Shown here: in pieces, positions 743-38,724 of the stretch
Numbering within the stretch: the first letter of the stretch is position 1
Layout: every line of letters begins with the position of its first letter
Assembly (NCBI GenBank): GCA_002269645.1
Contig: NIVC01002673.1
Location: forward strand, 1 to 39,657
Length of the DNA: 39,657 nt
Origin: Macrostomum lignano
Taxonomy: Eukaryota
Reading direction: 5' to 3'
Translations under genes and position numbers: made by a program
Notes under the pieces: model-generated
Database searches by the model: none
Seen by the model: the letters and a program-made list of their open reading frames with translations, nothing else
What the model was told of the DNA's origin: nothing

Positions 743-1640
743 TGAGGAAGATCTGCGGATAAAAGCATTGAGAGGAATACGAGTAGAAGCAAGGAAGTCC
801 AACAGCACAAATATTTCATCAAGGTTACTTGTAGCGAAGTCAAATTTGGACCTTATTTTTAGTTGCTAAAATTAGAGCTTTCGACTTTGAGTTGAAAATC
901 GACTGTACATTGAGGCTACGCTTATGTGTACATTCAGTACTCGCGAAGAGTGTACGAGTAGTTCATTCCCTGAGGATGCACCGTCTCGTAATTCGAGCTC
1001 ATGACCCAATCCGTGGCCGAAATTTCGTGGACATTTCATTTAGTTAGCACAATCTATTGACCGAAAATAGAATTTGATTGTTTAAACGCAGCGAATACCT
1101 TAGTTTCAGAGGGAACCACAGAATATCAAAATGTTATCTTAAACAGCATGGAATGGGTGAATTATAGCTCGAGTAATCACTGAGAATAGAATCATTACCA
1201 AACTGTCTATATTGTACACAAAGTGTCGAAATTACTTCTTTAGTACCGCTTTTCCTTAGAATACGGCACGCATTAGTCTACTGTAAGTATACTAATTGTA
1301 GCAGTAGCGTGCGAAAATTTTATTCAGTATTAAAAAGATATGAACGCCAGTACCTGTTGACAATTAATGACTTAGCACCTGTCCCCCAAGGCGCTGCTAC
1401 ACCCAGATTCAAGAGTGTACAGGAATGGCCTGGCAGAACTGTACAGCCAGTGAGTGTACATTGAAAGCCTGTATTTCTAATGCACGCAGTGCATTGAAAA
1501 GAAACTCTCTCTATCCCCAGCTAGCGATAAAGCCACATTGCATTGCCGGTTTTTTCAGTAGCTGGCGAAGAGAGCGCGAAAGGCCAAGAGAGCCGAAATA
1601 AAACAATAACCGGAATTATTAAAATTGCTGCTCAATCTCT

Positions 1641-4600
1641 ATGCTGCGCATTGGAATTGACGTTGGCGGCACCAACACGGATGCTGCTCTGTTGAAGGCC
1701 GCAGAAAATAGCACCGGCCGGCCCGCTGTGAGTCCTGCTTGTACACTGTCGATTGATAATGGGGGGGAGATAGAATATGCAGGAACAGACACATTGTAGT
1801 TGTATGCATAGCCACCTAATAGCCTGCTGACGTGTAGATACGAAGGCGAAAAAGTACTTCTAGTCACCTATATTGATGGTCATTAATAGACCTTTGAACT
1901 GGAGGTCTGCCGAACCTTCCTGTGGGGGAAGACACCGAAGACGCCTTGTGACCCGGAGGAATCTGATGAGCTGTTGGGATGTTTTTGGTCGGGTCGGCGC
2001 GCTTCTTCGATAGATGGGTTCAGCTAGAGGTGATGAAGGTTTTCATTTTTTAGGTTGCAAAACTGACACAGCTTGCTCTCCTCGGTCGCTTCCTCGGAGG
2101 AAATTGTGTTTGGTAATGCAGCCATAAACTATGAGAGTCATGGTGAGGACCCGGTTGTGTCCGTTGGTTTTGATTCAAAAGGACCTTCTGGAGACGGTGC
2201 GATGGGTTCGGAACTGCCACTTAATATTTGGCGCTTGTTCACCAGCAAGGTTTTGCTACATGATTGATAACTGAGCGGGCAATCTAGTTTGGGCCAGGGA
2301 AGGAGCTGGAGGCATACCTGAGACGATTGAGGATCTCGTGTCAAGCCAGTTAATTACCCATTAGCCTTGAGTAACCTTGGTCTGCTGGAAAGTCACCTTT
2401 ATCTCTACCTGCGGATAGACGAGTTATCTGATACAGAACCCTAAATACTTGCTGCATAAAAACTGCTCTTTGACTTTGAACAGATCCTGCGCAGTGTCAA
2501 GACGCCAACAACTGACGACGTAACCGGAGGCGTCCGTCAGGCTCTGCGCGAAGTACTGCAAATCGGCTCTCCCGATGAAGTCAAGGAGCCTGTGCAGCTC
2601 GTCAGCATCGGCACCACGCACCTCATCAATGCTGTCTTGCAGCGTCGCGGCCTCGCCAAGATCTGCGTCGTCCGACTGGGCCGGCCAAGCACGGCTGCTG
2701 TACCGCCGTTCTCTGATTGGCCAGAGGACCTGCGGCAGGCGGTCCGTTGCCGCTGGCTGCTCGCTGACGGAGGCTACAATTATGATGGCGAGACTGTCAT
2801 CACTGAGCCGAACGAGGCGCAGGTGAGCTGTCATGGAAAATATTCCTCAGCAAAATATGTGAATTTCAGAGTATTCTAAGCACTAAATGAAAATATGCAT
2901 AAATTGGGGTTGTAGCCTAGTGGTTACAGCGTCGGAATCACAACTTGAAGGTCGGGGGTTCCATTCCCGATCCCACTGGAACAATTTGTGTCCTTGAGCA
3001 AGACACTTACTCTGCATTGCTTCAGTTCACCCAGCTGTAAAATGGGTGCCCGCATTAGCTGGGATAATTAAGGGCGTGTTGCGACCTTCCCGTCCTTGGA
3101 CTGAACAGCCGTACGCAGCCTTGAGATATGCCGCGCAATAGCTGCGGCTGAGCTGTCAGTTGCATATCTGGCCATTAGTGCAAACTGGCCTCTATCTCTA
3201 TATGGTTACAGTAAGTTGTTATGTATTTCTCAACCCTTGCAGATAAAGGAATTCGCCAGGTCAACCAGCGCCGAAACTGGCTGCCGACGATTTGTAGTTG
3301 TGGGAGTCTTCGCTCCGGTGAGGCCAGACCAGGAGCTGCAAGCAGGCCGCTGGATCAGAGAGGCGGTGCCGGGCGCCAGCCTCACCCTGTCCCACCAGGT
3401 GGCTGGCAGTCTGGGTCTACTCGAGCGCGAGAACGCATCAGTGCTGAACGAGTGCCTGAAACCAGCCTGTGCGAGGGCGATTCGCGCATTCCAGGCTGCC
3501 ATGACCGAAGTCGGATTGGCCTGTCCGCTGGTGCTGACGCTCAGCGACGGCACGGTGGCTACCGCACCGGACTGCCTCGACCGGCCCGTATCGATGCTGG
3601 GCTCCGGACCAACGAACAGCATGCGCGGGGCCGCATTTCTCACGGGCCTGTCCGATGCTATCGTTGCCGACATTGGAGGCACGACCACGGACATTGGCCT
3701 GCTTGTAGGAGGCTTTCCGAAGCCGGCCGCTGTCCGAGTTCGCATTGCGGGAGTGGCGACCAACTTCACCCAACCTGACGTCACATCGATTGCGCTCGGT
3801 GGAGGGTCCATCGTGACGGCTGGCCTGACTGGTGAATCGCCTTCTGTTGGTCCGCAGTCTGTGGGCTACAAACTCATAAAGGAAGCTCTGGTCTTCGGAG
3901 GGAACATCCCTACCGTAACTGATGCCGCCGTTGCTTCCTCGCCTCACGACGTGCAGGTGGGCGACGCTGATCGCCTCAGAGCTCGGCTCGCTGATGCAAA
4001 CGAAGAGTCGCAGTCACTGAGTCGTCTGCTCAGGGCGGCCTACTCGATAGCTCTAACTAGCTTGGAGGCCGCTGTAGACGCCGCCCGTGTATCGAGTGCT
4101 CAGATGCCCGTCGTGCTGGTTGGAGGTGGCGCGGCTCTATTCTCGGGCGCCCGAAGCCTGGCCGGAATGCCGGTGCAAGTTCCCGCCGACGCCGGAGTGG
4201 CGAACGCGCTGGGCGCAGGTCTCTGCCAAGTAAGTGGCAACGTTGAGGCTACGTTGAATCTGGCGGATCCAGCCGAGCGAAAAGCCCGCCTAGACGAAGT
4301 CAAGGCTGCCGCTGTTGACGCAGCCGTTTCAAGAGGATCGGTGCGCTCTTCGACGCAACTAAAGGAACTACACGAGGTCCAGCTGCCCTATGTGCCAGGT
4401 GGTGCTTGTCGTGTCTCAGCCAGGGCTATTGGGGAGCTTGATATCTCTGCTGCTGCTCGTCTGAGCTTGCAGGTAAATGCGCATGCTGACGGTGCTGATG
4501 CCTCAGTTTTATCGGAGGAGGAGAGCGGTACCGCTGCCAAACAAGCTTCACGCAGTACCTGTGTGCCTGTGCCAGCACAGCGCGAGTTTGATGACCAAGG

Positions 4601-5816
4601 CGATTGGCTTCTCAGTGACTACGACACTCACTGTCTGAGCGTGGGCGCCGGGCTTATAGGTTGCGGGGGAGGCGGCAGCCCCTACGTCGGCCGGCTGATG
4701 CTCAACTGTCTGATGGAGAACGGTCATCGGCCTCGCATAGTGAAACTCGACCGAATGCTTGAGCTCAACGGAGCGGAAGGCCTGGTTGCCCTCCCTGGCT
4801 TTGTGGGCTCGCCGACAGTCTGCAATGAAAAAATCACTTCCGGTTTAGAGACAGCAACAGCCATTCGGCTCGTCCACCTGGCTGACGAGCTGCGTCGGCA
4901 GAAACCTGAGCAGCAGCTGCACTTTGTCGAAAGCTGCGATGCACTCGGTGGCGGTGAGGTCAAATGGGATGAAAAAATTGTCGGTGTAGCCTCCTTGGAA
5001 ATCGGGGGACTAAACAGCATTGAGCCTCTGGTGGTAGCGGCTAAACTTGGTCTGCCCGTACTCGACATGGACGGCATGGGCCGGGCATTCCCGGAGCTGC
5101 AGATGGTTCTGCCGATGATTGGCGGTTGTCCAGCGGCCCCGGCTGCAATTGGCGATGAGTTCGAGCGAGGTGCCGTCATTGTCGAGTGTGATAGCGCCAA
5201 GGAGCTGGAGACGCACTTCCGCAGTGTCTGCGTCCAGCGTGGCTGTTCGGTTGGTATTGCGATGCCTCCACTGAAGCTGCAGCAGTGCAGAGAGCACCTG
5301 CTGCCTGGCAGCTACACCAGAGCCTGGCGTCTCGGCGACGGAATCCTGCGAGCTCGTGCGGCCAAGACGGATCCAGTGGAAACCGCGCGCAGTTTGCTGA
5401 ACGGTCGCGTGCTGTTGTCGCGCGGCAAGATTGCGGACGTCCGTCGAGTTACCAGCGGGGGATTCGCACGCGGCAGCCTGATTGTAGTTGAGGACAGGCG
5501 CGGAGAAAGCGAAGAGAGCGGCCTCGATGTGGAGTTCCAGAACGAGTACCTGCTCGTTAAGCGTCTGGGCGCGCCGGAAACTGAGGCACTGGCCTGCACA
5601 CCGGACCTCATCATAGTGATGGACGCAGACTCCGGCGAGCCGGTAACGACAGAGGAGCTGCGCTACGGCCTCCGGGTAGCCGTGCTGGCTGCGCCGTGCC
5701 ACCCGCGAATGGCGACGCCAGCCGCGCTCGCTGCCGTCGGGCCGCAGGCGTTCGGCTTCGACGGAATCAAGTACCGACCCTGCGCCGAGTATCGGCTCGA
5801 TGCTGACGAAGCGTGA
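1641..5816 (+). CDS. Hydantoinase-A/oxoprolinase-family + DUF917 fusion protein (~999 aa, 3 exons)
   Basis: join(1641..1727,2484..2822,3243..5816); both introns are GT-AG, phase 0. N-half motifs: IGIDVGGTNTD, SIGTTHLINA, GSGPTNSMRGA, VADIGGTTTDIG, SIALGGGS, VGPQSVG, VLVGGG, ANALGA (Hydant_A_N/Hydantoinase_A). C-half motifs: GAGLIGCGGGGSPY, GFVGSPT, EIGGLN, LPVLDMDGMGRAFPEL, GKIADV..GGFARG, EFQNEYL, PDLIIVMD..GEPVTTEELRYGLRV (DUF917). Confidence 0.9.
1800..2400 (-). mobile_element. Possible highly degraded non-LTR retrotransposon RT fragment in intron 1 of the hydantoinase gene
   Basis: Interrupted minus-strand peptides appear in RT-like order: HEILNRLRYASSSFPGPN*I (cf. SAPGPDGI), a frameshifted F-R-P-I-A-like stretch, EEATEESKLCQFCNLKN (cf. 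DLKNAF), KVRQ. Weak, recognised by eye only. Confidence 0.3.
2906..3202 (+). mobile_element. tRNA-derived SINE, family 1 (CORE-like central domain), full-length copy in intron 2
   Basis: tRNA-like head with A box (TAGCCTAGTGG) and B box (GGTTCCATTCC). Central domain TGTGTCCTTGAGCAAGACACTTAC...CTGTAAAATGGG at 2987..3046. Homologous copies at 10965, 11651 and 24429. Confidence 0.85.
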
Positions 5817-6509
5817 ACTCCTGGGCTTCTTGAAGCTTCTTGAAAACCAGCCAGTCTGGCAACCTAACGGACGATTGACTTTAAAATAGGACCTCCAAGT
5901 TGCGATGAAATATTCCAATTTTATTCAAGTTAAAACAATTCAAAATATTTAAATGTTTAAATATATTGCTGGATCAATATACGAGCTAAGTCTGACTTAA
6001 GAATTGTTTCCGTTTTAGACAATAAAGAAGACAGCAAGACGCGAAAATGATTATAAAAATAAAGGAAATTGATGCCAGAAATTTGCACAATTTATTTAAA
6101 AGATACGCATAGGAAATCTGGAATAAACGCGCGATCTCTGTTGCATTCGCGCCGCGGTAAGGCCGTGAGAAACGTGCAAAGCAAAAACCCATGCGCTTGC
6201 AGACCGGAAAAAATTAGGATAAAAAATTAGAGAATCTACAGCCGGAATTGTCAAGTCAATGGCGCTGATGCAGGTAAAAGCGGAGAGCATACTCGCGAAT
6301 TACTGTTACAACAACTCTAAGTAAGTAGGGAATTACAACTTTAATTATTGAGCAATAGATGGATGCACAATGTGATAATTATTATTGAAGCATCAGTAGT
6401 CAAGGGACCGAACCCTGTGTCACATTGGCATCTAGCCTCCAGCGCAACTGTTCGCTAGGTGCTGACATCGGATGCTACTGTTGGATGCCCGGAGTCCCGG
6501 ACACCGGCC

Positions 6510-10224
<3,715 letters not shown>

Positions 10225-11515: not shown

Positions 11516-14500
11516 CTACTCAATCAGCTTGGACTTCAGGAAGTCAACGAAGTCGTCAATAAGCGACGGCCAGGCGCCTGAAATGTCGGATTGCAGAAAT
11601 GTACTTTTATTTATCGGCGCTTTTGCCTGTAGATGGGGCACTCGGCGCATTTGCGACCCCCCGTCCTTGGACTGAAGAGCCGTACGCAGCCTTCAGATGC
11701 ACATCTGCCCAGTGGGGCAGGTGTAATCAATAATAATAATAATAAACATTGTGCCACATTGCTCAATAGCCCGCAGCCTACCATTGGGATCATAGTCGGC
11801 CAGGTTGTCCGGGTTGCTCACAAAGTCGAAAAATAAATTCCAGGTGTCGCGAGAGACTCCGCGCACCTTGGCCTCGCGCAGGAAACGAAACCAGGACTCG
11901 AGCAGCTGACCGAACGGCCCGCCATTCAGCAGCAGGTTCCAGTAGGGGATGGCAGTCTCCACAGCTGCGGGGTGGCGAATTCGTCAGATGAAACTACTAA
12001 CAGTAGAATAAAATCGGCGAATCGGTGAGTGGGAATAGGGATAGGGATCCCGGGAGTCGGGATTTCGGAAGTCAGGATAGGGATCTCGGTAGTCGGGATA
12101 GGGATTTCGAGAGTCGGGACCTCGGGAGTCGGGTCGATATCCGGATCGGGACCTTTGGAAGTCGGGATCTCCAGAGTCGGGATCTCCAGATTCGGGATCG
12201 GGACCTCGGGAGTCAGGATCTGGATCTCAGGAGTCGGGATCGGGATTTTGGGAGTCGGGATCGGGATCTCGAGAGTCGGAATCGGGACCTCGGGAGTCGG
12301 GATCGGGACTTCGGAAGTCGGGATCTCCAGAGTCGGGATCGGGACCTCGGGAGTCAGGATCCGGATCTCAGGAGTCGGGATCGGGATTTTGGGAGTCGGG
12401 ATCGGGATCTCGAGAGTCGGAATCGGGACCTCGGGAGTCGGGGTCACAAAACTCGGGATAGGGACCTGGAGTCGGGATCGGGATCTCGAGAGTCGGGATC
12501 TCGGGAGTTGGGATTGGTTTATCAAAGATCCGAATTTCGTCGCAGACTTACGCAGCACTTTGGAGTCCCGCGACTCCCTAGCGAAGTCAAACGTGAAGGC
12601 GTGCAGGTCGCGCAGCTGCCCGACGTCCTGGGCCAGAGCCCGCTCGGTCTGGGCCAGCCGGGAGCGCAGCTTGTCGAGGCTGTCGGCGCCCAGACGGCCG
12701 AGGCCGGTGACGAATTCGGCTCTGGAGAACTCGCCCTGAACACCGGCCTGCAGCTTCCAGGCCAGCACGAGGGCGGCGAGGGACACCGGGTCGATGCGCA
12801 GATCGTCTAACAGGCGACAAACTCCGGTAGGGTTGATGCGGTCGGGGTCATCCTGAGAGTTAGGGCAGCGGTGCACAATACTGGTCATAAGCCTTGGTAT
12901 ACGGTTCGGGAACCTTAGTTGAATTTGGCGTTCCCAAGCAAGCCGCCTTTGAGAGTCATTCACAGAACATGTGGGCTGTCGTGCGATTCACAGCCATGAA
13001 GGCCAGTTCCAAAGGCACAGAGAGTCAGGACCGCTGTACACCCTGTGTGAGCGTGTGAGTGCGTGCCTGCGTACAGTATAGGCTCAGAAGTCAGTGGAAT
13101 GGGCAGAATTGCCTCAGCGCTGGTTGTGTTGGCTCAGAAGTCAGTGGAATGGGCAGAATTGCCTCAGCGCTGGTTGTGTTGGCTCAGGAGTCAGTGGAAT
13201 GGGCAGAATTGCCTCAGCGCTGGTTGTGTTGGCTCAGGAGTCAGTGGAATGGGCAGAATTGCCTCAGCGCTGGTTGTGTTGGCTCAGGAGTCAGTGGAAT
13301 GGGCAGAATTGCCTCAGCGCTGGTTGTGTTGGCTCAGAAGTCAGTGGAATGGGCAGAATTGCCTCAGAAGGCGTTGCGTCAGGGCGGCCGCACCTATCCA
13401 GCAATTAGTAATATTATTACGAGGGGTGTCCCCGAAAAGTTCTGACACTTTTAATTTCAGAGCAAAAACAGTCGCAACTGCAAGCACAACTTTGGTGTCA
13501 TTTTCAAGCGGCACATCTCTGCTTTCCATCAATTGAATTAAGTCGCGTGTATTTTGGTCATTTCATTCAAAAGTTACGTGTCTTAGAGTAAAAGTTAAAA
13601 AATATAAAAGTCGATTTTTTTGTGTTCAAAGAAACGAATTGTAGTCATTCATCATTATCATCCTTCAAGGCAGCCTTGTCAACGTAGTCTCCACCTGTAG
13701 CAACACACTTTTCCCATCGTTTGAGCATTCCGTGCCTTCGGCCTTTCAAATGCACACTCATGATGGTGTCAAAAATCACAAAAATCAAAACACTTGACCT
13801 TTGCAAGGTGCAAAACAGTGAGATTTGCTTACAAGTGACGGAGTGTATAAAATACTCAACACAGAAATGGTGGACGGTAAGAGAGGGATGCACTGTAAAT
13901 TAGAGCCGTTTTGTGTACGCTCGTAAACGATTGTACTTGCGTGCTGCAAACAAGATCCATAAAAAGCTATGTACTTCACCTTTTACTCCTGTAAGACTAT
14001 CTGCAGCATTTTGATGGTTTTTCACACACAATTTTTGAATGAAATGACCAATATACACGCGACTTAATTCATGACATGGGCACCCCTAGTATATTATCTT
14101 TAATGTATTATTCTATTCTTTTTCATTTATATGATCCTACTGCTCAACTTCCCTCAACCGAATGCATTCAACGACACCACAGTGATCGCTAGCCAATGGC
14201 AGGCCTCCCGCACCTGACTAACAACATCACCCCCAATTAGGCAGCTTCTGAGTCCTGGTTCTCAGGGCGGGAGGGATTAAGATCGCTACGTCCCGTGGTT
14301 GAGTCTCACCTGAGACCGGTAGGAGTTGAACAGCGCGGCCACCTTTCTGGTGTCAACAGACAGCCGCTCGTCATATTTGGCGGGGCTGCTGTAATAATCG
14401 TCCACTGCTGCATCCAGGCGCCAGGCATTCTGGCTGAGGCACTGCAGCGCCACCGGCTCCTGCGCCTCTGTGCACTGCACGAACCGCTGCACGAGCTCGC

Positions 14501-14525
14501 GCTGTTCTCGCCGTAGTCGGTTCAT
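11516..14525 (-). CDS. DCUN1D1: DCN1-like NEDD8 E3 ligase (UBA-like + PONY domain), 253 aa, 4 exons
   Basis: complement(join(11516..11577,11782..11964,12552..12852,14310..14525)); 762 nt, phases 0/1/1 consistent, all GT-AG. Motifs: MNRLRREQRELVQRFVQCT..WRLDAAVDDYY, LVLAWKLQAGVQGEFSRAEF, FTFDFARE, ETAIPYWNLLL, VSRDTWNLFFDF, YDPNGAWPSLIDDFVDF. The paralog assignment (D1 vs D2) is not resolved. Confidence 0.93.
11651..11745 (+). mobile_element. SINE family 1 3' fragment with (AAT)n tail in DCN1 intron 3
   Basis: TTGCGACC..CCGTCCTTGGACTGAA.AGCCGTACGCAGCCTT matches ~3079..3122. CACATCTGCCCA.TG.GGCAGGTGTAATCAAT(AAT)n matches the 3' end of the 24429 copy. Confidence 0.75.
12036..12510. repeat. GGGATC/GGGAGTC-based minisatellite filling DCN1 intron 2, with an internal ~141-bp duplication
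   Basis: Iterated GGGAGTCGGGATC(GGGA)(T/C)CTC units. The block starting at 12201 recurs at 12342. Confidence 0.9.
13025..13367 (+). repeat. Partial SINE family 2 copy with a 50-bp internal unit tandemly amplified ~5.7 times
   Basis: 13025..13080 resembles family 2 (G.CCGCTGTACAC.CCTGTGTGAG.GTGTG). The unit GGCTCAG(A/G)AGTCAGTGGAATGGGCAGAATTGCCTCAGCGCTGGTTGTGTT repeats at 13081, 13131, 13181, 13231, 13281, and partially at 13331. Confidence 0.85.
13420..14089 (-). mobile_element. Internally deleted Tc1/mariner element (670 bp) in DCN1 intron 1
   Basis: TA on both flanks (13418-19, 14090-91). Imperfect TIRs CGAGGGGTGTCCC / GGGCACCCCTAG. A subterminal ~39-bp inverted repeat (TGAATTAAGTCGCGTGTAT.TTGGTCATTTCATTCAAAA) at ~13535 and ~14034. 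Minus-strand remnant HGMLKRWEKCVATGGDYVDK matches the mariner transposase C-terminus. Confidence 0.8.
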
Positions 14526-20811: not shown

Positions 20812-21939
20812 CACCCATTATTTTTGCTAGCAGCCAAATTGGCAGCAGACAAATTGACTGGGAACCACATTTTTCTTAGTTAGGCTTATCAGTTGTTAGG
20901 GTCTAATATATTGACATAATTCTGATTCTGATTACAGAACCAATCAGACTAATAATGAGACTAATTCTGATTTCAGAACCAAATTAGTAGGAAAATGAAA
21001 CCATCAAATGTATTTTATATGTTTAAATATTAGTATTTTTAATTAAGCATAATATTTAGGCTACTTTTGTCTTTATTTGACTTATTTCATCCTCTCAGCT
21101 AGTCTATATGACAATTTTATATTGTTTGTCCATTTGTCTGTCTTTGATTTTTTTGAAAACTATTAAAATTAGCTTTAAAAGGTCTAATCTTCTGGCAATT
21201 AGTTATAACCTTTTTTGATGAAAAAAATCAAATGGGAAGTAGGTCAAATGTTTAAAAAAAGTTTTTTATTTTTTTCAATAGGCACTTTTTTAATTTAATT
21301 GCTTAGTTCAACCGTTTAGGCCTCTCCTTGGCCTATGCACAATGTTCAATATTCACAATACTGTTTAGCTAAGAAGTTTTATGACCCTTTGTGTGGCGTG
21401 GCAGGCTTGCAATTTAATTGTGGTATTGATTGATTTTTATTGTTTATTTAACTAGTCTGATAGCCAATGATTAATGAAAGTATAGGGAATTATAAAGATT
21501 TTTTGTTTCTAGATCAGAATTTTAAGGCCATGCTCAAGAAGTTAACAGGGTATATATTAGAATGAAATTTTGGCAATAGCTAATTGTGTTCAAAAAATGA
21601 AATTCTGTACCAGGAATATCTCTCTAAAAAGGTCATTTAAATGAAAGATTTTTTATTTTTATATGGCTTACCAGACTGTATACCAAATATACATAAAAAA
21701 TGTAGCATATAAGGTACATTTTTTAAAGCATGGAAATAAAGTCTAGGCCTAAAGATAATAGATCAATCTGTGATTAAAACAGCTAGTTAAAGCAAGCAAC
21801 AAAATTAAGTTTGTTTATCTTTCATGATTGGCTAGATAAAAAGTGACAAAAGAAGTTGTTATGATTTGTAGAAGTGTAGCTTGTCTAACAAATAGTAGGA
21901 AAATAAACGTCAACAAAAACATAAAAAGTTAACTTTGGT

Positions 21940-23150
21940 AAATTCTAGCCAACGCATTTCATCAAACATAAGACATTGTCAGGGCAAATTCAATCAACCT
22001 AAGATCACACCACCAATATATTTAAGCAAAAATCACTGTACAGTCCAGAGGCGGGTCAACACAGTCCGGTAGAATTTAGAAAGTGCCAAGTACACAACAA
22101 CGTGAGAGAGAAAAAAAATAATAAATAGGCATAGCTCTGCTCACAGTACTCTTAGCTCACGCTCCACCCCATTGCTAGCAAGCTGCACATTCAGGTTGGG
22201 TTTGTGCATTCTGATATATGAAGCTTCGATAATCTTAAGCTGGTGGTCAAATTTGCACCCATCCAGCACTTTAAAGAGCTGAATCGGTTCACTGTCACAG
22301 CATTTTTTACAAACAAGCAGATGGTCATTAATCGCAGAGCTTTTTAGCCAATGTTCCCTAGCTCTAGTGTGCAGGTGTCGCTTCGTTTTTCCAATGTAGG
22401 AAATGCTCTGATCCTCAGTGCAGCGAAATTGGTAAACAACACCAGCCCTTAGAGCAAGTGGAACAGCTGACTTGAGCCTGCTAGCATAGCAACCAATCTT
22501 TTCGGTGCGAAACACAATCCTAACGGTGCACTTAAGCCATTTGCTAAACATTTTCTCAAGTTTTTTCTTAAAGTCAAGCGAAGTGTTGCCAAAAAATGGG
22601 AGAACCAACAGAGCGTCCCAAGAATCTATCTCCGGTTGCCTGGGTCTCGCATTGCTAGAAACTTTCTTAGTGACAAATGCATTGATAATATGGCTGACAA
22701 AACTGAGAGGGTAACCATTAGATCTAAGGATTTTAGTCAGGGCACAAACCTCTTGGTAAAATAAACTCCAAGAACTGCTCACCTCGTAGGCTCCATGAAG
22801 AAGGCACCTAACTAACCCGGATTTCCAGTGAGTTGGACATAAAGCATGAAAACTTAACATCAGCCCAGTAAATGTCAGTTTACGGTAAACTTTCATAAGA
22901 GGACAGTGTCCAGAACAGAAAGAAATGTTATGATTTCTTCTCTAGTGGAAAAAAATGAGCGAAGACCTCTTAATAACTGCTCTCTAAACAATGTTTCTTA
23001 TTTCATGTTGTCATAACATTATTTTTTTATTTTCAAGCTTGAAGCATCGCTTCTTTAGCTTATGGCTAGGTGTATGTGCAACTGAGTCGTCTATGGCCAC
23101 ACCCAACAGAAGTGTCTTCCCCATACTGCTAATGGTATCCTATTGCAGCC
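21940..23150 (-). mobile_element. Penelope-like retroelement 3' fragment: RT C-terminal/thumb region + GIY-YIG endonuclease (ORF 22141..22896)
   Basis: VYRKLTFTG, NGYP, LPFFG, GVVYQFRC...SYIGKTKRHLHTRAREH...SAINDHL...LKIIEASYIRMHKPNLN is the typical PLE thumb + GIY-YIG signature. Upstream RT is degraded (GVAIDDSV cf. GVAMGSPL). Confidence 0.88.
21949..21982 (-). ncRNA. Putative decayed hammerhead ribozyme core in the Penelope 3' repeat
   Basis: Minus strand reads CTGACAATGTC-TTATGTTT-GATGAAATGCGTTGG. Three CpG-type reversions give CTGACGA-TGTC..GAC-GAAAC-GCGTTGG. Located ~160 nt downstream of the GIY-YIG stop. Stems I and III were not confidently folded. Confidence 0.4.
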
Positions 23151-23217
23151 AATGGCCATTTTCAACTATCTAGCATCTGTGCATTTAGCACAGATTGGTC
23201 TTTAGCTATATAGGCAC

Positions 23218-23406
23218 AGCGTGGGTGGCGGGAGGTTGGGGCACCAGGGGCACATGCCCCCCCCCCTAGAAAATGAGTCTACATGGTATAGCATTTTTAG
23301 TGCTTTTTCTGATTTTAGGCCCTAATTAGCAGCTTATAAAGGTACCTGTGCCCCCTTTGCCCTGTGCCTGATGCCCCCCCTAAAATATTTGGCTCCACTG
23401 CCCCTG
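23218..23406. mobile_element. Possible small DNA-transposon remnant with (C)AGGGGC-type termini
   Basis: G/C-rich island in AT-rich DNA containing GGGGCACATGCCCCCCC and ending in GGCTCCACTGCCCCTG. Flanks TAGGCAC / GAGGCAC. Confidence 0.35.
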
Positions 23407-24307
23407 AGGCACAATCTAATATACTAGTATAGTCTAGCACTAGAAAGGGGGGCATCTGGCACAGATCAGACCTTGACTACAAATGGGTGATAATATAATA
23501 CCTAGAGTAAGAAAATATAGCATATAGCATTAGATAGTTTTTTCAGTAGAATAATGGTGCCATTTGGCATTCTAGGTCCAAAACCCTGATGTTAAACTGA
23601 AAACTAGAATTCCAGGTGGCATCAAAAAAAAACTTTTGAAATTAAGAAAATTCCTATCTTTAATCTGCCCCTCACGCTGCTCTGACTTTGAGAGCCTTTG
23701 ACCTATATCCTAAAATGCACTACATTTCTATTCTAATGAATTCTATGCCATTTTAGATCAACTATCAAATGATTTTATTTGTTACAAGTTTAGTAAGTTG
23801 GTATTAATCTTAGAAAAAACAGGGTGACAATTTGGCATTGGGGTTCTAAGTCTAGGATACCAAAATAAAAGTCAGGATGTCATGGCATCTATATACCACA
23901 GAAAACCTAGAGTAATAGTAACCTATGCACTAAGGTTTTTATTCAATAGGGTTTCTACATAGGCCTAATAACTTTCTAAATTATATAGTTCTAGCCTATG
24001 CAAAGAAATTTTTAGCAACTGCATTAAAATTTATTGACACTTTAGATAACTATCAATAAAAAATAGGCCTCGATACTCAAATTTTTGCATTTTATTTGCT
24101 ATTGGCTAATGCTAAGCAATGTATCTAGTTATTCTAATATCTGTAAGTCAACCAGGTTGTAAAAAATGGTTTTTATTGCAATAGTTATTTGTATTTATTT
24201 TATTTTTATATAGGTTAATCTAATATTTCATCAAATTACTTAATATTAGTAGACTTTAATACTTTATAATTACTATGCATGTTGTCAATATTAGTACAAA
24301 GCCACAA

Positions 24308-26006
24308 ATGTTATCACAAGACTCGCAGTATGGAACTGTTAATGGAGCTCAAGGTTCTTCTGATGCTGCCATTGATCGTGTAAGTTCATAAATCATAATG
24401 AGAGATTAACAAGATTTGTAGTTGACATGGGGGTTGTAGCCTAGTGGTCAGAGCATTGGACTCATGACTTGAAGGTTGGGTGTTCGATTCCCGAATCCCA
24501 CTGGAACAATTTGTGTCCTTGAGCAAGACACTTAACTCTGCATCGCTTCAGTTCACCCAGCTGTAAAATGGATGCCAGCATTAGCGTGTGTGTGGCGACC
24601 GTCAGACAGCTGCGTCTGAGCTGTTGGTTGCACATCTGCCCATTGAGGCAGGTGTAATCAATTATTATTATTAGTTGGCATGCTCTTGTCAAAGTAAAAA
24701 TGAAACTTAATAGTATATAAAAAGTGATTTGCTTTAAAGTATTGTATTTTGGTATTACAGTATACTTATGGCACTTTCTGTAACACCAAATTGCATTATT
24801 TTTATTTTAGATCGTTTGTGACATGCCCGGGACCTCACACAGTTCAGCTGCTAGAGATGAGTAAGTTTACCTGCCATTTTTATTGACTGAGTTTGAAAAT
24901 GCATATGTTATTTATTATGTCTGACAGTCCCAGAACCCTACGGGATAGAGAAAGAATGTTCTACAGTCCCATTAAGAATGCCCGATTCGTTTGCAGCGCC
25001 GATGCAGAGCCGGGTCCCGTGCCCAACATGAGCTTCAGCTATCAGGTCAGAACACACCGAACTCCGGCTCCATCGCGGCTGGATGTGATCAAAGCGCCAC
25101 TGCTCAAATACGGTCCTAGGTGAGTAAACTTTACAGCTTCTTTTAGTCACTAAGGCTTGATTTGAATCGAACAGCAACGTCTTGTATACTGAAATCTTAA
25201 TTTCTAGCTGGCTGTCCCATCCTGAGATCCAGCATCACTGTCGCCTCATTCTGCTTTCGTCGTTTTTCTGCACCTTTGGCGTTGGTAAGCTTTATAATGT
25301 TTGTGTATTTGTTTTACTTCTAATGTCATTTCTTTCATCTCCTCTCCGTCTGGCTCACGCAGTGCTGCTGATAGTCGGCGTGTACATCCTGAGCGCGCCG
25401 CCGCATCCGAATTTCAGCGCCATCTTCATTGTTGGCGGAGTGATCATCTTCATTCCCGGCAGTGAGATTCTGACTGCTAATTTTGGCGTTGCACACTTTC
25501 CACCAACCCCAATCATATCGCTCACCCCTGCCTGCCCCCACAAACCCCAATCGATGTACATCGCTCACTCCCTGCCCGTCCCTACCAACCCCAATCAATG
25601 TACATCGCTCACTCCCTGCCCGTCCCTACCAACCCCAATCAATGTACATCGCTCACTCCCTGCCCGTCCCTACCAACCCCAATGAATGTACATCGCTCAC
25701 TCCCTGCCCGTCCCTACCAACCCCAATGAATGGACATCGCTCAGTCCCTGCACATCGCTCACTCCCTGCTTTTCCCTGCCAACCCCAATCAATGTACATC
25801 GCTCACTCCCTACCCGTTTCTACCAACCCCAATCAATGTACATCGCTCATCCAACCTTGTCACCAGCAACCCTAATGAATGTACATGAATGTACATCGCT
25901 TACTTTTTTGTCAATCAATTCCGCAGTTTACCATTTGGTTTATGTTCTACGCGCCTATCACGGCCACGAAGGCTACTCATTCCAGGACCTGCCAATCATG
26001 GATTAG
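24308..26006 (+). CDS. TMEM134: TMEM134-like membrane protein, 189 aa, 6 exons
   Basis: join(24308..24379,24811..24860,24928..25119,25208..25284,25363..25461,25927..26006); 570 nt, phases 0/2/2/1/1 consistent, all GT-AG. C-terminus SWLSHPEIQHHCRLILLSSFFCTFGVVLLIVGVYILSAPPHPNFSAIFIVGGVIIFIPGIYHLVYVLRAYHGHEGYSFQDLPIMD fits the TMEM134/TMEM230 family (two TM helices, PG.YH, G..G(Y/F).(F/Y)..LP). The HP.I...R.(V/I)L motif favours TMEM134. Confidence 0.85.
24429..24672 (+). mobile_element. tRNA-derived SINE family 1 copy in TMEM134 intron 1
   Basis: GGGGTTGTAGCCTAGTGG head, GTTCGATTCC B box, the same central domain as the 2906 copy, and an (ATT)n tail. Confidence 0.85.
25504..25850. repeat. 44-bp minisatellite (~7-8 copies) in TMEM134 intron 5
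   Basis: Unit CCCCAATCAATGTACATCGCTCACTCCCTGCCCGTCCCTACCAA; TGTACATCGCTC recurs at 25555, 25599, 25643, 25687. Confidence 0.9.
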
Positions 26007-27009: not shown

Positions 27010-27445
27010 AATAGGGTGGGGGTTGAATGGTCAGTTATGGCTTTACGCACTCCACGCGTGGACACTGATAAGGACCGCTAGCCAAGAGCAATGAAGTAAG
27101 AGCATTGGCTGGGCCTGGGGAAGGGAAGTGAGGGTGTGGATTGAATAGTCAGTCATGGATTTACGCACTCCACGCGTGGACACTGATAGGCTAGCCAAGA
27201 GCAATAAAGTGTAGGCATTGGCTGGGCCTGGGGAAGGGAAGTGAGGGTGTGGGCTGAATGGTCAGTCGTGGCTTTACGCACTCCACGCGTGGACACTGAT
27301 AAGGACCGCTAGCCAAGAGCAATGAAGTAAGAGCATTGGCTGGGCCTGGGGAAGGGAAGTGAGGGTGTGGGCTGAGTGGTCAGTCGTGGCTTTACTCACT
27401 CCACGCGTGGACACTGATAAGGACCGCTAGCCAAGAGCATTGGCT
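27010..27445. repeat. ~118-bp tandem repeat (~3.7 copies), each with the palindrome TCCACGCGTGGA
   Basis: Palindrome at 27051, 27169, 27282, 27400 (periods 118/113/118). Each unit also has an AGCCAA...TTGGCT inverted pair. Confidence 0.9.
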
Positions 27446-28474: not shown

Positions 28475-29200
28475 CTACTCGCGGGCGCCAATACGACCAC
28501 CATTTGGCTTGAACTTCACGCCCGGGAAGCAGTCGGGATGCTCGCCTCTCAGCAGCACCCGGTCCTCCTCCGTCAGATCAACTCGACCTGATGGAGAAAT
28601 GTCCGAGTTTTCAATGACGCGCCATGATAACCAATTGCATCCATTTATACCTAGGAAGCTTTGGTCCAAAATAACGTTAGGACTTTTAGGGTCTTCCCAT
28701 TATTACAATCCAATCTAGCATTAGATTCTAAGAGTGAGTGATTCTTTGAGTGAGAGCGTGATTCTTAGGGCGATAGAGTGATTCTTAGGGCGATAGAGTG
28801 ATTCTTAGGGCGAGAGAGTGGTTCTTAGGGCTATAGAGTTATTCTTAAGGCGAGTGAGTGATTCCTAAGGTAAGAGAGTGACATGAGAGTGAAAGGCGAG
28901 TGAGTGATTGGTATTCACCGTTTGGGAATCGATAAACCCAGAATATGATTTGCTCAAGCGGTTTTCCCTCTGTGACTCCGGTCCCCTCTCACCCTCGTGT
29001 CGGGCGATGAAGGCCAGGCAGATGCGGGCGGTGAGCAGAACAGCGTCGCACGGGTGCAGCGAGTCGGCGAGACCGATCCGCCTGGACAGCCAGGCAGACA
29101 GGTACAGCCCTGCGTCCGTCTGCGCCGCGTGGTTCGCGCCTCTGCGGGGTTTAGGGCGGAGTGAGCATTAGGATTCTTAGAGTGATTCTTAAGAGAGGGA

Positions 29201-29255
<55 letters not shown>

Positions 29256-36249: not shown

Positions 36250-37720
36250 ACTTGCTATAGCAGACACTGCACCTGTTGTATGTTATACTAAAGTAGGGCT
36301 AGTAGAAAATACAAATTCAGCACTTTTTTCTACTCTTGTTGAGCTATGTGTGCCAAGCTGAAGCCTCCATGGTATTTTTCATCCTTGTGAACCACTCAAA
36401 GATGAAAATGGTATCTCAGTCCCATATAAGGTGCTATAGCCAAGTTGCACACACATTCTATTAGCTCTAGAAAGTGCTAATTTGCTCTTGCCATTGCAGT
36501 GCAGGCTGCAAGACCATCTAGCATACAAAGAAATGGCAGACAAGAAATCAAAAGTAGCATACATTCTAATAACTTTACTATCAGGGAAGTTAAATACTGC
36601 ATCTGCAATCCAAAAGACTGGACTTGCCTGAAAATAGCCTGGTAATAATGAAAAAAGCAACCACATTCCACAAACTTAGGCTGCTAGATAAACTAGCCAA
36701 ATGGCTTGCTAGGTGGCCAACTCAAAGTTGCAGATAAATTGGATTGGTGCATTATTAGTTAACTCTCATACCTGCTAGAAGTAGGCCTGGTATTCAGCCT
36801 GAACCTTACCTGATATTAGAAAGAATACCAGTGGTACCAGATTTTCTCAATTGTCATAGCAAATGACTCTATGAAGGCTGTGCAGCTGCATATAAGGTGC
36901 CTTGACAATGCCAAATGTGCCATTATAGTGCAGAATATGTTGGGTAGATAGGATCTCCCATTATATTGTAGACATAAAAACAAAGTGCTATCTATTTGTC
37001 TCTTGGACAATAATGTCTTGCAATCAAAATCTGGGGGCACACCATACATGTGCAACAGTTGGCCAAGTCAGCTGATCGGGCCAACCGATTTGGCGGCCAA
37101 TCAAGGAAGTCGCAAAAATTCCCACCCAAAAAATACTAAAATAGTAGTACTAAGTAGCTGATGAGGCATTTTGACCTAATAAGAAAGTCATAGTTACTCC
37201 TGCCGTTTACCCAAAGTTGCGTTAATTTTGCTTTAGGGTTTTTTACATGTAAGTCGCATTTTTTGCCAAAAACTATGTCGCATTTTTGTTAAAACTAAGT
37301 TGCATGGCCGACTGAATGTTGGAGGTTGCGCATGTATATGGCACACACTTAGGATCAACCTGAAAATGGATATTAACTAGCTCTGTGGAATGGCTTTTTA
37401 TAAGAATAATTAGCATTGCAACTTTAGGAATCTATATTAATCAGTCTATACTTCTTTTAAGAGCTCTCTTACTTTCTCCTTAACAAAAATGCAAGCAGAT
37501 TTGAATGGCACTCACTTTGTTTCTGTTTTTACCTGAGCTATAATAAATCTTTTTTTCAACTGGCTGATCAACTGAATTGTAGGTATGCTCTTTCAAGGCG
37601 TGATTTGTTCTGTCTTGATGCTTGACATATGAGCCTAGACATTTTGGTGTAGTTTTATTGCAACAATAGTAAGTGTTGCTGTTTTGCCAGCTCTTGACAT
37701 GCAGCAAGCAGTGAAGATCA
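36250..37720 (-). pseudogene. Fossil FLYWCH-MULE (Mutator-like) transposase
   Basis: With stops and frameshifts, in order: YYCCNKTTPKC...EHTY (FLYWCH-like), FKSACIFV, VDPKCVPPDF/LQDIIV..R*HFVFMST..EILS..HYNGTFGIVKAPYMQLHSLH..VPLVFFLISGK..EYQAYF, CNFELAT*QAI, GCFFHYYQAIFRQVQSFGLQMQY, LPFL, RMKNTMEA..WH.*LN. These match the MULE DGTF / DFE / GC.FH / RTNN..E.WH core; both catalytic Asp appear as Asn. Confidence 0.85.
37043..37338 (-). mobile_element. hAT-type MITE, copy 2, nested in the MULE fossil
   Basis: Reverse complement of 30591..30886. Flanks GGGCACAC / TGGCACAC (7/8 TSD). Removing it plus one TSD restores VDPKCVPPDF. Confidence 0.88.
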
Positions 37721-38398: not shown

Positions 38399-38724
38399 AG
38401 CAAGAAAAACTCATTTTATTGCAGCATACTATAGCGTAATGCAACTATTGTATGCACAATGCTGTCTTTTGCAACACTATAAGCATTTAATAGCTTCTTT
38501 TCCATTGATAACAGACTATATGCACACAACACATGGGTATACACCTGCCATTTTAATGGTTTTTCTTTATCAAAAACTATTTAGGCTCCAATGCAGGGAC
38601 CAATGCAGGATAACTGCTATTTGATAAGTGTCCAGCCAATAAAAGTTATATCCTTTTTGGAAGAGCAATCAATCCCACTGTCAAAAATGAATTTTATGGT
38701 CAAAAAATCACTCTCACCCACTGT

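What the first reader, a model, noticed from the sequence alone, without database searches (positions are those of the whole stretch)
1641..5816. Spliced hydantoinase-A/oxoprolinase + DUF917 fusion enzyme in an animal-like genome
Seen: one ~999-aa reading frame joins an ATP-dependent hydantoinase-A/oxoprolinase-type module to a complete DUF917 domain through an acidic, low-complexity linker. There is no hydantoinase-B part, so this is not 5-oxoprolinase (OPLAH). Both introns lie in the first 142 codons, followed by a 2574-nt exon. Established: bacteria often carry these two families as neighbouring separate genes near nucleobase/hydantoin permeases, and fusions are known to me mainly from fungi. 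From memory, DUF917 has been relabelled S-methyl-thiohydantoin desulfurase-like (ergothioneine-related catabolism); this needs verifying. Inference: a bifunctional enzyme giving the host an uncharacterised (thio)hydantoin/lactam catabolic step, possibly gained by horizontal transfer and then intronised.
Basis: partly seen in the sequence, partly recalled or inferred. Interest (0 to 1): 0.75.

Follow-up and report, generated by a model that had tools for sequence, protein, structure and literature searches.

The report
Conserved animal hydantoinase-A/DUF917 fusion gene
This is a real three-exon flatworm (Macrostomum lignano) gene already in the public databases; its two-part enzyme of unknown substrate occurs in many invertebrate animals, fungi, algae and amoebae, so it was inherited rather than taken from bacteria.

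Summary
Exons 1641-1727, 2484-2822 and 3243-5816 (+), joined by two GT-AG phase-0 introns, encode 999 aa with Hydant_A_N + Hydantoinase_A + S-Me-THD_N + S-Me-THD_C (old DUF917). No hydantoinase-B part is present. The protein is 100% identical to the annotated M. lignano protein BOX15_Mlig028193g1.

The horizontal-transfer reading fails.
- The same ~1000-aa fusion occurs in cnidarians, placozoans, echinoderms, hemichordates, amphioxus, molluscs, brachiopods, nemerteans, priapulids and a sea spider. It also occurs in fungi, Naegleria, Balamuthia and green algae.
- In the 80 best bacterial and archaeal loci the two halves are always separate adjacent genes.
- Macrostomum carries the insertion seen only in the animal sequences of the DUF917 half.

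One real oddity remains. Amphioxus, Lingula and Priapulus share about 15 intron positions, and six of these are also shared with Trichoplax and a soft coral. Macrostomum has none of them, and its two introns sit at positions not seen elsewhere. Three mollusc orthologues have no introns at all. A processed-mRNA copy followed by intron gain is plausible but unproven.

The function is unknown. My inference is that the ATPase module activates a cyclic amide or ureide and the DUF917 module replaces HyuB. The gene is ordinary and already catalogued; interest is low to moderate.

The parts
1641..1727 (+). Exon 1 (codons 1-29). It starts with the ASKHA phosphate-1 motif DVGGTNTD (nt 1659-1682).
   Evidence: ATG at 1641 and GTGAGT donor at 1728. 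Motif translation checked. D7, G9, G10, T11, T13 and D14 are invariant in 32/32 eukaryotic and 29/29 bacterial relatives.
1728..2483 (+). Intron 1 (756 nt, phase 0). It lies at the edge of a Macrostomum-specific 7-residue insertion, at a position not shared with any of five intron-rich animal orthologues.
   Evidence: GT-AG boundaries. Intron map. Insertion alignment.
2484..2822 (+). Exon 2 (codons 30-142)
   Evidence: AG acceptor, GTGAGC donor, frame continuous.
2823..3242 (+). Intron 2 (420 nt, phase 0), at a position not seen in the other animals mapped. It contains a tRNA-like head at 2906-2975 followed by a possible SINE-like body.
   Evidence: Boundaries. Rfam tRNA 25.3 bits, below the gathering score of 29. 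A related macrostomid contig has an 83-nt non-coding insert at exactly this site.
3243..5816 (+). Exon 3 (codons 143-999 plus the stop codon), 2574 nt
1641..4466 (+). Short HyuA-like ATPase module (residues 1-~550; the range includes both introns). It has an ASKHA fold. The phosphate-2 motif DIGGTTTD is at 3669-3692 and VLVGGGAAL at 4113-4139. Pfam detects no HyuA C-terminal domain.
   Evidence: Pfam. PDB sequence hits to N-methylhydantoinase, caprolactamase CapA and acetophenone carboxylase. Foldseek hits 9h03, 5l9w, 5svc, 6yra at E 1e-27 to 1e-19. Motifs.
4467..4586 (+). Disordered Ala/Ser-rich, net acidic linker (residues ~551-590)
   Evidence: pLDDT below 50 for residues 554-581. Composition. 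Absent from the separate bacterial genes.
4587..5813 (+). DUF917 / S-Me-THD-like module (residues 591-999). It has a Gly-rich loop GCGGGG (4659-4676), the motif DMDGMGRAFP (5064-5093) and QNE (5538-5546).
   Evidence: Pfam PF06032 and PF20906. The only structural relative in the PDB is 2o3i, TM-score 0.68-0.78. Motif residues are invariant or nearly so from bacteria to animals.
4884..4976 (+). Insertion in the DUF917 N-domain found only in the animal sequences (residues ~690-720), predicted mostly disordered
   Evidence: The segment E671-E728 is 58 aa here and 58-77 aa in nearly all sampled animal sequences. It is 30-31 aa in the bacteria and 30-33 aa in algae and protists. pLDDT is below 50 at 697-701 and 708-718.

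Best explanation
The locus is the Macrostomum lignano orthologue of an old, widespread eukaryotic fusion gene. The gene is already annotated as BOX15_Mlig028193g1.

Architecture. The fusion joins a short hydantoinase-A-type ASKHA ATPase module to a DUF917 (S-Me-THD-like) module through a disordered linker. In bacteria and archaea the same two proteins are encoded by adjacent, often abutting or overlapping, genes. The eukaryotic gene keeps that order in one chain.

Inheritance. The flatworm gene was inherited vertically within animals. Its unusual exon structure arose because all of the roughly 15 or more ancestral bilaterian introns were lost. This happened either through a processed-mRNA copy replacing the parent gene or through wholesale intron loss. 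Two introns were then acquired in the macrostomid lineage at the 5' end.

Mechanism (inferred, not shown). The ATPase module binds ATP-Mg and phosphorylates the carbonyl oxygen of a cyclic amide or ureide, such as a hydantoin-, lactam- or diketopiperazine-like compound, as HyuA-type subunits do. The DUF917 module takes the place of HyuB. It displaces the phosphate at the activated imidate carbon, which opens or converts the ring. This is chemically parallel to the leaving-group displacement carried out by stand-alone DUF917 (S-methyl)thiohydantoin desulfurases. The substrate is unknown.
For: Shown:
- Gene model and four domains. 100% identity to the annotated M. lignano protein.
- A second copy, 99.7% identical at the DNA level, on another contig. 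This fits the known duplicated blocks of this assembly (PMC5730564).
- The same collinear ~1000-aa fusion occurs in at least 10 animal phyla. It also occurs in Coccomyxa, Myrmecia and Balamuthia, and in Naegleria, Lentinula, Sanghuangporus and Eremothecium.
- About 100 of the best 150 representatives of 50%-identity clusters are of fusion length.
- None of the 80 best bacterial and archaeal loci is fused. HyuA-like (~515 aa) and DUF917 (~370 aa) are adjacent ORFs.
- Six intron positions and phases are shared by Trichoplax, Dendronephthya, Branchiostoma, Lingula and Priapulus. About 15 are shared by the three bilaterians. They fall in both halves, in the linker and in the animal-only insertion.
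- Macrostomum has the animal state of several indels. E671-E728 is 58 aa against 30-33 aa outside animals. N909-P929 is 21 against 17. Residues 45-72 span 28 against 25-26 in bacteria and most non-animal eukaryotes.
- A profile built from animal sequences scores the DUF917 half at 456 bits. Non-animal eukaryotes give 373 and bacteria 360.
- Concatenated NJ tree: the eukaryotic fusions form a clade in 87.5% of bootstraps. Macrostomum never groups with bacteria in 200 replicates.
- The flanking genes are ordinary animal genes, a HERC-type E3 ligase and a DCN1-like gene.
- Three mollusc orthologues have an intronless coding sequence, so complete intron loss in this gene has a precedent.

Support for the mechanism:
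- ASKHA motifs and all DUF917 signature residues are invariant or nearly so from bacteria to Macrostomum.
- The N half matches NMHase, caprolactamase CapA and acetone/acetophenone carboxylase ATP-binding subunits.
- In those systems the HyuA-type subunit phosphorylates the substrate and passes it to the partner subunit (PMC8453981).
- pTM 0.87 for the whole chain suggests a fixed interface between the modules.
- Genes next to the bacterial pairs are dominated by Opp/Dpp-type ABC transporters, NCS1 permeases and TonB receptors. This points to catabolism of an imported small nitrogen compound.
Against: - Distance trees do not resolve where Macrostomum sits among eukaryotes. 'Animals including Macrostomum' is recovered in only 42% of bootstraps, and the point tree places it basal to animals plus Balamuthia.
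- The HyuA half scores about equally against the animal and non-animal eukaryote profiles, 532 against 538 bits. Animal membership therefore rests mainly on the DUF917 half and on indels.
- Retrocopy origin cannot be separated from stepwise intron loss. The neighbouring HERC-type gene also has a 3.1-kb exon. The genome averages about 5 introns per gene. General intron loss in this lineage could suffice.
- No biochemical datum exists for any HyuA-like/DUF917 pair in the literature I could search.
- The DUF917 fold has no functionally annotated structural relative. The role of 'HyuB substitute' is pure inference.
Confidence: 0.8

Rival explanations
1. One reading: the gene, or its two halves, entered the flatworm lineage by horizontal transfer from bacteria and later acquired two introns.
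For: The gene has none of the ancestral animal introns and only two introns at positions not seen elsewhere. Identity of the HyuA half to the best bacterial proteins (39-45%) is about the same as to other animals (37-44%).
Against: - Bacteria never show the fusion in the 80 best loci.
- Macrostomum has the eukaryote-type fusion with a linker and the eukaryote-invariant W597.
- It carries the insertions seen only in animal sequences.
- It falls in the eukaryotic clade in every one of 200 bootstraps.
- The DUF917 half scores about 96 bits higher against the animal profile than against the bacterial one.
Confidence: 0.02
2. The gene was acquired by Macrostomum from a non-animal eukaryote (alga, fungus or protist) that already carried the fusion, as an intron-poor copy.
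For: - The NJ tree of the HyuA half places Macrostomum next to green algae, with low support.
- The HyuA half scores 538 bits against the non-animal eukaryote profile and 532 against the animal profile.
- All animal introns are missing.
Against: - The ~30-aa insertion at E671-E728 is present in Macrostomum and in nearly all sampled animals. It is absent from every alga, amoeba and protist sampled.
- The same holds for N909-P929.
- The DUF917 half is clearly of the animal type.
- Long-branch attraction explains the odd placement of a fast-evolving flatworm sequence.
Confidence: 0.05
3. Functional rival: the DUF917 module is a true (S-methyl)thiohydantoin desulfurase of ergothioneine or thiohistidine catabolism, and the enzyme handles thiohydantoins.
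For: - The only named relatives of the DUF917 half are NCBIfam NF058532 (S-methyl thiohydantoin desulfurase) and NF058529 (thiohydantoin desulfurase).
- From memory, the phyletic pattern resembles that of ovothiol-making animals: many marine invertebrates appear among the best 120 hits, with no vertebrate, insect or nematode.
Against: - Scores are 57.7 and 48.3 bits against cut-offs of 450 and 440, so the protein is not an equivalog.
- The named desulfurase models are stand-alone DUF917-length profiles of 352 and 362 positions. Here the module is always tied to an ATPase, which suggests different chemistry.
- The bacterial neighbours surveyed are peptide-type transporters. I did not look specifically for ergothionase or thiourocanate hydratase genes, and the census shows only the top 25 families.
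Confidence: 0.1
4. Functional rival: the ASKHA module is not a substrate kinase. Instead it is an ATP-driven activator or reactivase of the DUF917 enzyme, like diol-dehydratase reactivase or the activators of 2-hydroxyacyl-CoA dehydratases.
For: Foldseek also lists reactivase and activator ASKHA proteins (2d0p, 4ehu, 9gai) at E ~1e-4. The two modules are always paired.
Against: The matches to substrate-phosphorylating HyuA-type subunits are far stronger, at E 1e-27 to 1e-19 and over most of the N-terminal module. Residues conserved across the family (D7, D285, D292) are equivalent to those lining the phosphorylation site in CapA.
Confidence: 0.1

Closest known systems
Orthologous HyuA-like/DUF917 fusion proteins of other animals, for example Branchiostoma belcheri LOC109483812, Lingula anatina LOC106170126 and Trichoplax TRIADDRAFT_26861. 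All are uncharacterised.
   Same: - The same four Pfam domains in the same order, about 1000 aa, with a linker.
- 37-44% identity over 98-100% of the length.
- The same animal-only insertions.
- The same invariant motif residues.
   Different: Macrostomum shares none of their 10-18 introns. It has its own insertions at residues ~22-29 and within 371-436. Its HyuA half is more divergent.
Bacterial and archaeal operons encoding a short HyuA-like protein (~515 aa) next to one or two DUF917 proteins (~370 aa)
   Same: 39-45% and 30-41% identity to the two halves, the same gene order, and all motif residues conserved.
   Different: - The genes are separate, with no linker.
- They lack the animal-only insertions.
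- A second DUF917 paralogue is often present.
- They sit next to Opp/Dpp-type ABC transporters, NCS1 permeases or TonB receptors.
ATP-dependent HyuA/HyuB enzymes: 5-oxoprolinase (OPLAH), N-methylhydantoinase (PDB 9h03, 7hk5), caprolactamase CapAB (6yra), acetone and acetophenone carboxylases (5svc, 5l9w)
   Same: The N-terminal module shares the ASKHA ATP-binding fold and motifs with their HyuA-type subunit. It probably shares the strategy of activating the substrate by phosphorylation.
   Different: There is no HyuB (metal-site) subunit or domain. The HyuA module is about 150 aa shorter, with no C-terminal domain detected. The partner is DUF917 instead. NCBIfam scores are far below the equivalog cut-offs, for example caprolactamase alpha at 73.7 against 1000.
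Stand-alone DUF917 enzymes named thiohydantoin desulfurase and S-methyl thiohydantoin desulfurase (NCBIfam NF058529, NF058532), and the structural-genomics protein CV_3147 (PDB 2o3i)
   Same: The same two-domain DUF917 fold (TM-score 0.68-0.78 to 2o3i) and the same Pfam families.
   Different: The sequence relationship is remote: 48-58 bits against cut-offs of 440-450, and E 4e-10 to 2o3i. Those are stand-alone DUF917-length proteins or profiles, not fused to an ATPase. The animal module carries extra insertions.

Membership tests
Hydantoinase A / oxoprolinase superfamily (Pfam PF05378 + PF01968) | Both Pfam models matched above their gathering scores | tested here: met
   96.5 bits (cut-off 25.2) and 93.4 bits (cut-off 22.9).
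Hydantoinase A / oxoprolinase superfamily (Pfam PF05378 + PF01968) | ASKHA ATP-binding motifs intact (phosphate-1 DxGGT, phosphate-2 DxGGT..D, GGG) | tested here: met
   DVGGTNTD, DIGGTTTD and VLVGGGAAL are present and invariant or nearly so across 61 relatives.
5-oxoprolinase (OPLAH) / N-methylhydantoinase type HyuA-HyuB enzymes | A Hydantoinase_B domain or subunit fused or partnered with HyuA | tested here: not met
   No Hydantoinase_B hit in the 999-aa protein at E up to 0.01. The PDB alignments stop at chain residue 486 of the 1288-aa NMHase.
Caprolactamase alpha / acetophenone carboxylase subunits (NCBIfam equivalogs) | Score at or above the curated equivalog cut-off | tested here: not met
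   73.7 against 1000, 55 against 1500 and 26.1 against 1250.
DUF917 / S-Me-THD-like family (Pfam PF06032 + PF20906) | Both domain models matched above their gathering scores, and the fold agrees with 2o3i | tested here: met
   132.1 and 186.8 bits against a cut-off of 27. Foldseek 2o3i E 4.6e-20, TM-score 0.68-0.78.
S-methyl thiohydantoin desulfurase / thiohydantoin desulfurase (NCBIfam NF058532, NF058529) | Score at or above the equivalog cut-off | tested here: not met
   57.7 against 450 and 48.3 against 440.
S-methyl thiohydantoin desulfurase / thiohydantoin desulfurase (NCBIfam NF058532, NF058529) | Desulfurase activity on (S-methyl)thiohydantoin substrates | not testable with these tools
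   Needs an enzyme assay.
Animal HyuA-like/DUF917 fusion orthogroup | Collinear four-domain single chain of about 1000 aa with an inter-module linker | tested here: met
Animal HyuA-like/DUF917 fusion orthogroup | Insertion between E671 and E728 seen only in animal sequences, and the longer N909-P929 segment | tested here: met
   58 aa against 30-33 aa outside animals, and 21 against 17.
Animal HyuA-like/DUF917 fusion orthogroup | Conserved ancestral intron positions | tested here: not met
   None of the shared positions is present. Mollusc members also lack them, so this feature is not universal within the group.
Animal HyuA-like/DUF917 fusion orthogroup | Phylogenetic placement inside animals | tested here: inconclusive
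   NJ bootstrap is 42% for animals including Macrostomum, and 87.5% for the eukaryotic clade. Profile classification is clear for the DUF917 half only.

The most novel reading that the evidence does not exclude
The short-HyuA/DUF917 pair may be a distinct, HyuB-independent class of ATP-dependent heterocycle-processing enzyme, conserved from bacterial operons to a single-chain enzyme in animals, fungi and protists. In marine invertebrates it might serve the catabolism of a diet- or microbe-derived cyclic ureide, thiohydantoin or cyclic dipeptide. The apparent phyletic pattern would fit a metabolite such as a thiohistidine derivative, though that link rests on memory only. Separately, the flatworm and mollusc genes might descend from one ancient processed-mRNA copy that replaced the intron-rich parent in part of Spiralia. 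The flatworm copy would then be a dated example of intron gain.
Probability: 0.3. Interest if true: 0.55.

Novelty: already known. Interest (0 to 1): 0.27.

Why it matters
As a discovery it matters little. The gene is annotated, its architecture is catalogued in Pfam, and the proposed horizontal transfer did not happen.

Two things have some residual value:
- This is a strongly conserved two-module enzyme that is widespread in invertebrate animals, fungi and protists. No substrate has been assigned to it in the literature I could search. M. lignano offers RNAi and transgenesis, so it is a workable system for finding the substrate.
- The gene family gives a clean case of intron turnover. About 15 introns are conserved from priapulids to amphioxus. 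Three molluscs have none. Macrostomum has none of the old ones and two at positions not seen elsewhere.

Tried and rejected
- NJ trees of each half separately were unresolved. They were also distorted by three badly extracted bacterial sequences (L009, L058, L074) and by long branches. I replaced them with a concatenated tree, indel characters and profile classification.
- Literature searches for DUF917, thiohydantoin desulfurase, ergothioneine catabolism and 'hydantoin utilization protein A' found nothing on the function of this pair. The one paper that mentions DUF917 says it is uncharacterised.
- A P. putida fitness study held nothing relevant.
- Foldseek with the DUF917 module alone gave no informative structural analogue beyond 2o3i.
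- The Lineus gene could not be looked up.
- I looked just downstream of the stop codon for a poly(A) remnant of retroposition and saw none. After this much time none would be expected, so this says little either way.
- Contamination or misassembly was considered and rejected. The gene has spliceosomal introns, sits between animal genes and occurs on two contigs.
- ARAGORN found no tRNA gene in the window. The tRNA-like stretch in intron 2 falls below the Rfam threshold.

Full report
**1. The observation**

The region holds a clean three-exon gene on the + strand. Exon 1 is 1641-1727, exon 2 is 2484-2822 and exon 3 is 3243-5816. Both introns have GT-AG boundaries and are phase 0. The coding sequence is 3000 nt and encodes 999 aa.

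Pfam finds four domains, all far above threshold:
- Hydant_A_N at residues 3-183;
- Hydantoinase_A at 204-472;
- S-Me-THD_N (PF06032, the former DUF917) at 603-785;
- S-Me-THD_C (PF20906) at 794-988.

No Hydantoinase_B match was found. The stretch between the modules (residues ~551-590) is Ala/Ser-rich and net acidic, and AlphaFold predicts it to be disordered. That includes the 2574-nt last exon and the Pfam renaming of DUF917.

**2. Where the sequence comes from**

The protein is 100% identical to the annotated 'hypothetical protein BOX15_Mlig028193g1' of the flatworm Macrostomum lignano. The window is the complete contig NIVC01002673.1 of assembly GCA_002269645.1. The lineage is Platyhelminthes, Macrostomorpha.

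A second copy with the same structure lies on contig NIVC01004125.1. It is 99.7% identical over 4.9 kb. This fits the published description of the assembly, which has 180 Mb of duplicated blocks at 95% identity or more. That paper also states that the annotation rests on a genome-guided RNA-seq transcriptome (PMC5730564). The annotated model equals the model deduced here, so the splice junctions and the single-transcript fusion have indirect transcript support.

The neighbours are ordinary animal genes. A HERC-type RLD+HECT ubiquitin ligase lies at 6510-10224 on the minus strand. A DCN1-like gene lies at 11516-14504 on the minus strand. Contamination can be excluded.

**3. Is the gene foreign?**

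No. Five lines of evidence point the same way.

- *Distribution in animals.* The best 120 database hits are almost all full-length, collinear, ~1000-aa proteins with the same four domains. They come from cnidarians, placozoans, echinoderms, hemichordates, amphioxus, molluscs, a brachiopod, a nemertean, a priapulid and a sea spider, at 36-44% identity.
- *Distribution outside animals.* The same fusion occurs in green algae and Balamuthia. It also occurs in Naegleria, basidiomycetes (Lentinula, Sanghuangporus) and a yeast (Eremothecium). About 100 of the 150 best representatives of 50%-identity clusters are of fusion length.
- *Bacteria and archaea.* In the 80 best loci of a scan of 185,579 species genomes, the two halves are always separate ORFs. 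They are usually adjacent in the order HyuA-like then DUF917, often abutting or overlapping, and a second DUF917 paralogue is often present. None is fused.
- *Trees.* In a concatenated NJ tree the eukaryotic fusions form a clade in 87.5% of bootstraps. Macrostomum never joins the bacteria in 200 replicates.
- *Rare changes.* The position of Macrostomum inside the eukaryotic clade is not resolved by distances: 'animals including Macrostomum' gets 42%, and the branch is long. Indels decide it.
  - The segment E671-E728 of the DUF917 N-domain is 30-31 aa in the bacterial sequences that aligned properly. It is 30-33 aa in algae, Balamuthia and other protists.
  - It is 58-77 aa in nearly all animals. 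The three exceptions (Lottia 31, Actinia 35, Trichoplax adhaerens 37) may be faulty gene models; Trichoplax sp. H2 has 75.
  - Macrostomum has 58 aa, at the same site and with a recognisable shared strand motif.
  - Two further indels in the DUF917 half and two small ones in the HyuA half also show the animal state.

A profile built from animal sequences scores the Macrostomum DUF917 half at 456 bits. The non-animal eukaryote profile gives 373 and the bacterial profile 360. The HyuA half is ambiguous between the two eukaryotic profiles (532 and 538) but scores above the bacterial one (508).

That criterion is met.

**4. The exon structure is the real oddity**

I mapped introns exactly in five orthologues: Branchiostoma has 17, Lingula 18, Priapulus 17, Trichoplax 10 and Dendronephthya 10.

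Six positions with identical phase are shared by all five. About 15 are shared by the three bilaterians. They lie in both modules, in the linker and inside the animal-only insertion. The fused, intron-rich gene therefore predates the last common ancestor of animals.

Macrostomum has none of these introns. Its two introns, after codons 29 and 142, are at positions seen in no other species. Intron 1 sits at the edge of a 7-residue insertion. Molluscs have a 4-residue insertion at the same site. Intron 2 contains a tRNA-like head, possibly part of a SINE.

A contig from a related macrostomid (Logan run SRR28338165, 71-74% identical) has an 83-nt non-coding insert at exactly the intron-2 site. Its ends resemble those of the M. 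lignano intron. It shows no intron 1, but it may be a transcript, so that absence is uninformative.

The orthologues of a scallop, an abalone and a mussel have a completely intronless coding sequence.

Wholesale, simultaneous loss of all introns is the classic mark of a processed-mRNA copy replacing its parent. That is my preferred explanation for Macrostomum, followed by the gain of two introns. Gradual loss cannot be excluded. The neighbouring HERC-type gene also carries a 3.1-kb exon, and the genome averages about five introns per gene. Whether the mollusc and flatworm genes share one retrocopy is open.

**5. What the enzyme probably does**

*The N-terminal module.* It is a short member of the HyuA branch of the ASKHA ATPases.
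- It matches N-methylhydantoinase, caprolactamase CapA and the ATP-binding subunits of acetone and acetophenone carboxylases. This holds by sequence and by fold (Foldseek E 1e-27 to 1e-19).
- Its phosphate-1, phosphate-2 and GGG motifs are invariant or nearly so in all 61 relatives examined.
- In that enzyme class the HyuA-type subunit uses ATP to phosphorylate the substrate (or bicarbonate). It then passes the activated species through a channel to the metal-containing HyuB-type subunit (PMC8453981).

*The C-terminal module.* Here there is no HyuB. The constant partner, from bacterial operons to animal fusions, is DUF917.
- The only solved structure with this fold is the unannotated protein 2o3i.
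- Its conserved features are a GxGGGG loop, DxDGxGRAxP, QNE and several acidic residues. These are invariant or nearly so from bacteria to Macrostomum.
- The whole-chain model has pTM 0.87, which suggests a fixed interface between the modules.

*Named relatives.* The only named DUF917 relatives are the NCBIfam models for thiohydantoin desulfurase and S-methyl thiohydantoin desulfurase. The Macrostomum protein scores about eight-fold below their cut-offs. It belongs to the same superfamily but not to the same enzyme.

*Proposed mechanism (inference).* ATP-dependent O-phosphorylation of a cyclic amide or ureide occurs in the ASKHA module. The DUF917 module then displaces the phosphate at the activated carbon, in place of HyuB. 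This parallels the displacement of sulfide or methanethiol from a thio-imidate carbon by the stand-alone desulfurases.

*Bacterial context.* Genes next to the bacterial pairs are mostly Opp/Dpp-type ABC transporter components. LuxR regulators, TonB receptors, NCS1 permeases and a few amidohydrolases also appear. This fits catabolism of an imported small nitrogen compound but does not name it.

*Localisation.* The N-terminus starts directly with the catalytic motif, so no N-terminal targeting peptide is evident. The protein is probably cytosolic.

**6. Comparison with what is known, and novelty**

The protein is a member of the HyuA superfamily and of the DUF917/S-Me-THD-like family. It belongs to the animal fusion orthogroup by architecture and indels, but not by intron positions. 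It is not an OPLAH, a hydantoinase, a caprolactamase or either desulfurase (see the membership table).

The exact sequence and its domain architecture are already in public databases. No paper I could search deals with its function. I therefore rate it 'already known' as an entity. Its function is open and its intron history is mildly interesting.

**7. Verdict**

The fusion, the absence of HyuB and the renaming of DUF917 are correct. The horizontal transfer and the novelty are refuted. Interest is 0.27.

Noticed in passing
window 2906-2975 (+), extending to about 3130, inside intron 2: A tRNA-like sequence (Rfam tRNA 25.3 bits, just below the gathering score of 29; ARAGORN calls nothing). It may head a tRNA-derived SINE, but the body was not analysed. 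It makes up roughly half of intron 2. Only one copy is in the window.
   Followed up: partly
window 6510-10224 (-): A HERC-type E3 ubiquitin ligase gene (RCC1-like domain plus HECT). 1046 of its 1081 codons lie in a single 3141-nt ORF (7084-10224). Long exons are therefore not peculiar to the hydantoinase/DUF917 gene at this locus.
   Followed up: partly
window 11516-14504 (-); repeats at 12051-12514 and 13081-13367: A DCN1-like gene (UBA_4 + Cullin_binding, as annotated) overlaps 21/42-nt G-rich tandem repeats and a 50-nt x 5.7 array. On the sister contig the 50-nt array is much longer, spanning at least 2.3 kb (L085 about 21836-24122).
   Followed up: no
L085 (contig NIVC01004125.1) against window 1190-6103: A second copy of the whole gene with both introns, 99.7% identical at the DNA level and encoding the identical protein. 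It is either a duplicated block of this partly polyploid genome or assembly redundancy.
   Followed up: partly
L088 (Ylistrum balloti), L090 (Haliotis rubra), L091 (Mytilus californianus): The mollusc orthologues (1048-1057 aa) are encoded by uninterrupted single-exon coding sequences. Lingula, Priapulus and Branchiostoma have 17-18 introns. This suggests an old retrogene at the base of Mollusca. Molluscs also share an insertion site with Macrostomum at Macrostomum residues ~22-29.
   Followed up: partly
L087 (Logan SRR28338165), positions 461-543: A relative 71-74% identical to the Macrostomum protein has an 83-nt stop-containing insert exactly at the intron-2 site. The insert begins GG rather than GT. 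It could be a retained intron with a damaged donor, a sequencing error or a pseudogene.
   Followed up: partly
window 22141-22896 (-): A 251-aa ORF with a GIY-YIG nuclease domain (E 2.9e-6) in an AT-rich stretch. It may be a remnant of a Penelope-like retroelement.
   Followed up: no
window 31170-32249 (-): An ORF with the N-terminal half of a PAF acetylhydrolase domain (PF03403, E 2.5e-35). A 21-nt x 13.5 tandem repeat (31302-31585) lies inside the reading frame.
   Followed up: no
window 25517-25886, 27013-27439, 28732-30209, 29192-29342, 37715-38400: Several satellite-like arrays (units of 44, 118, 20/89 and 342 nt) and an (AG)n microsatellite. They account for the extreme GC-skew spikes at 25-26 kb and 29-30 kb, and fit the known repeat richness of this genome.
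   Followed up: partly
bacterial loci L016, L022, L025, L029, L031-L033, L038, L060, L066 and others: Many bacterial operons carry two or more DUF917 paralogues next to a single short HyuA-like gene. This hints that one ATPase may serve several DUF917 partners.
   Followed up: no
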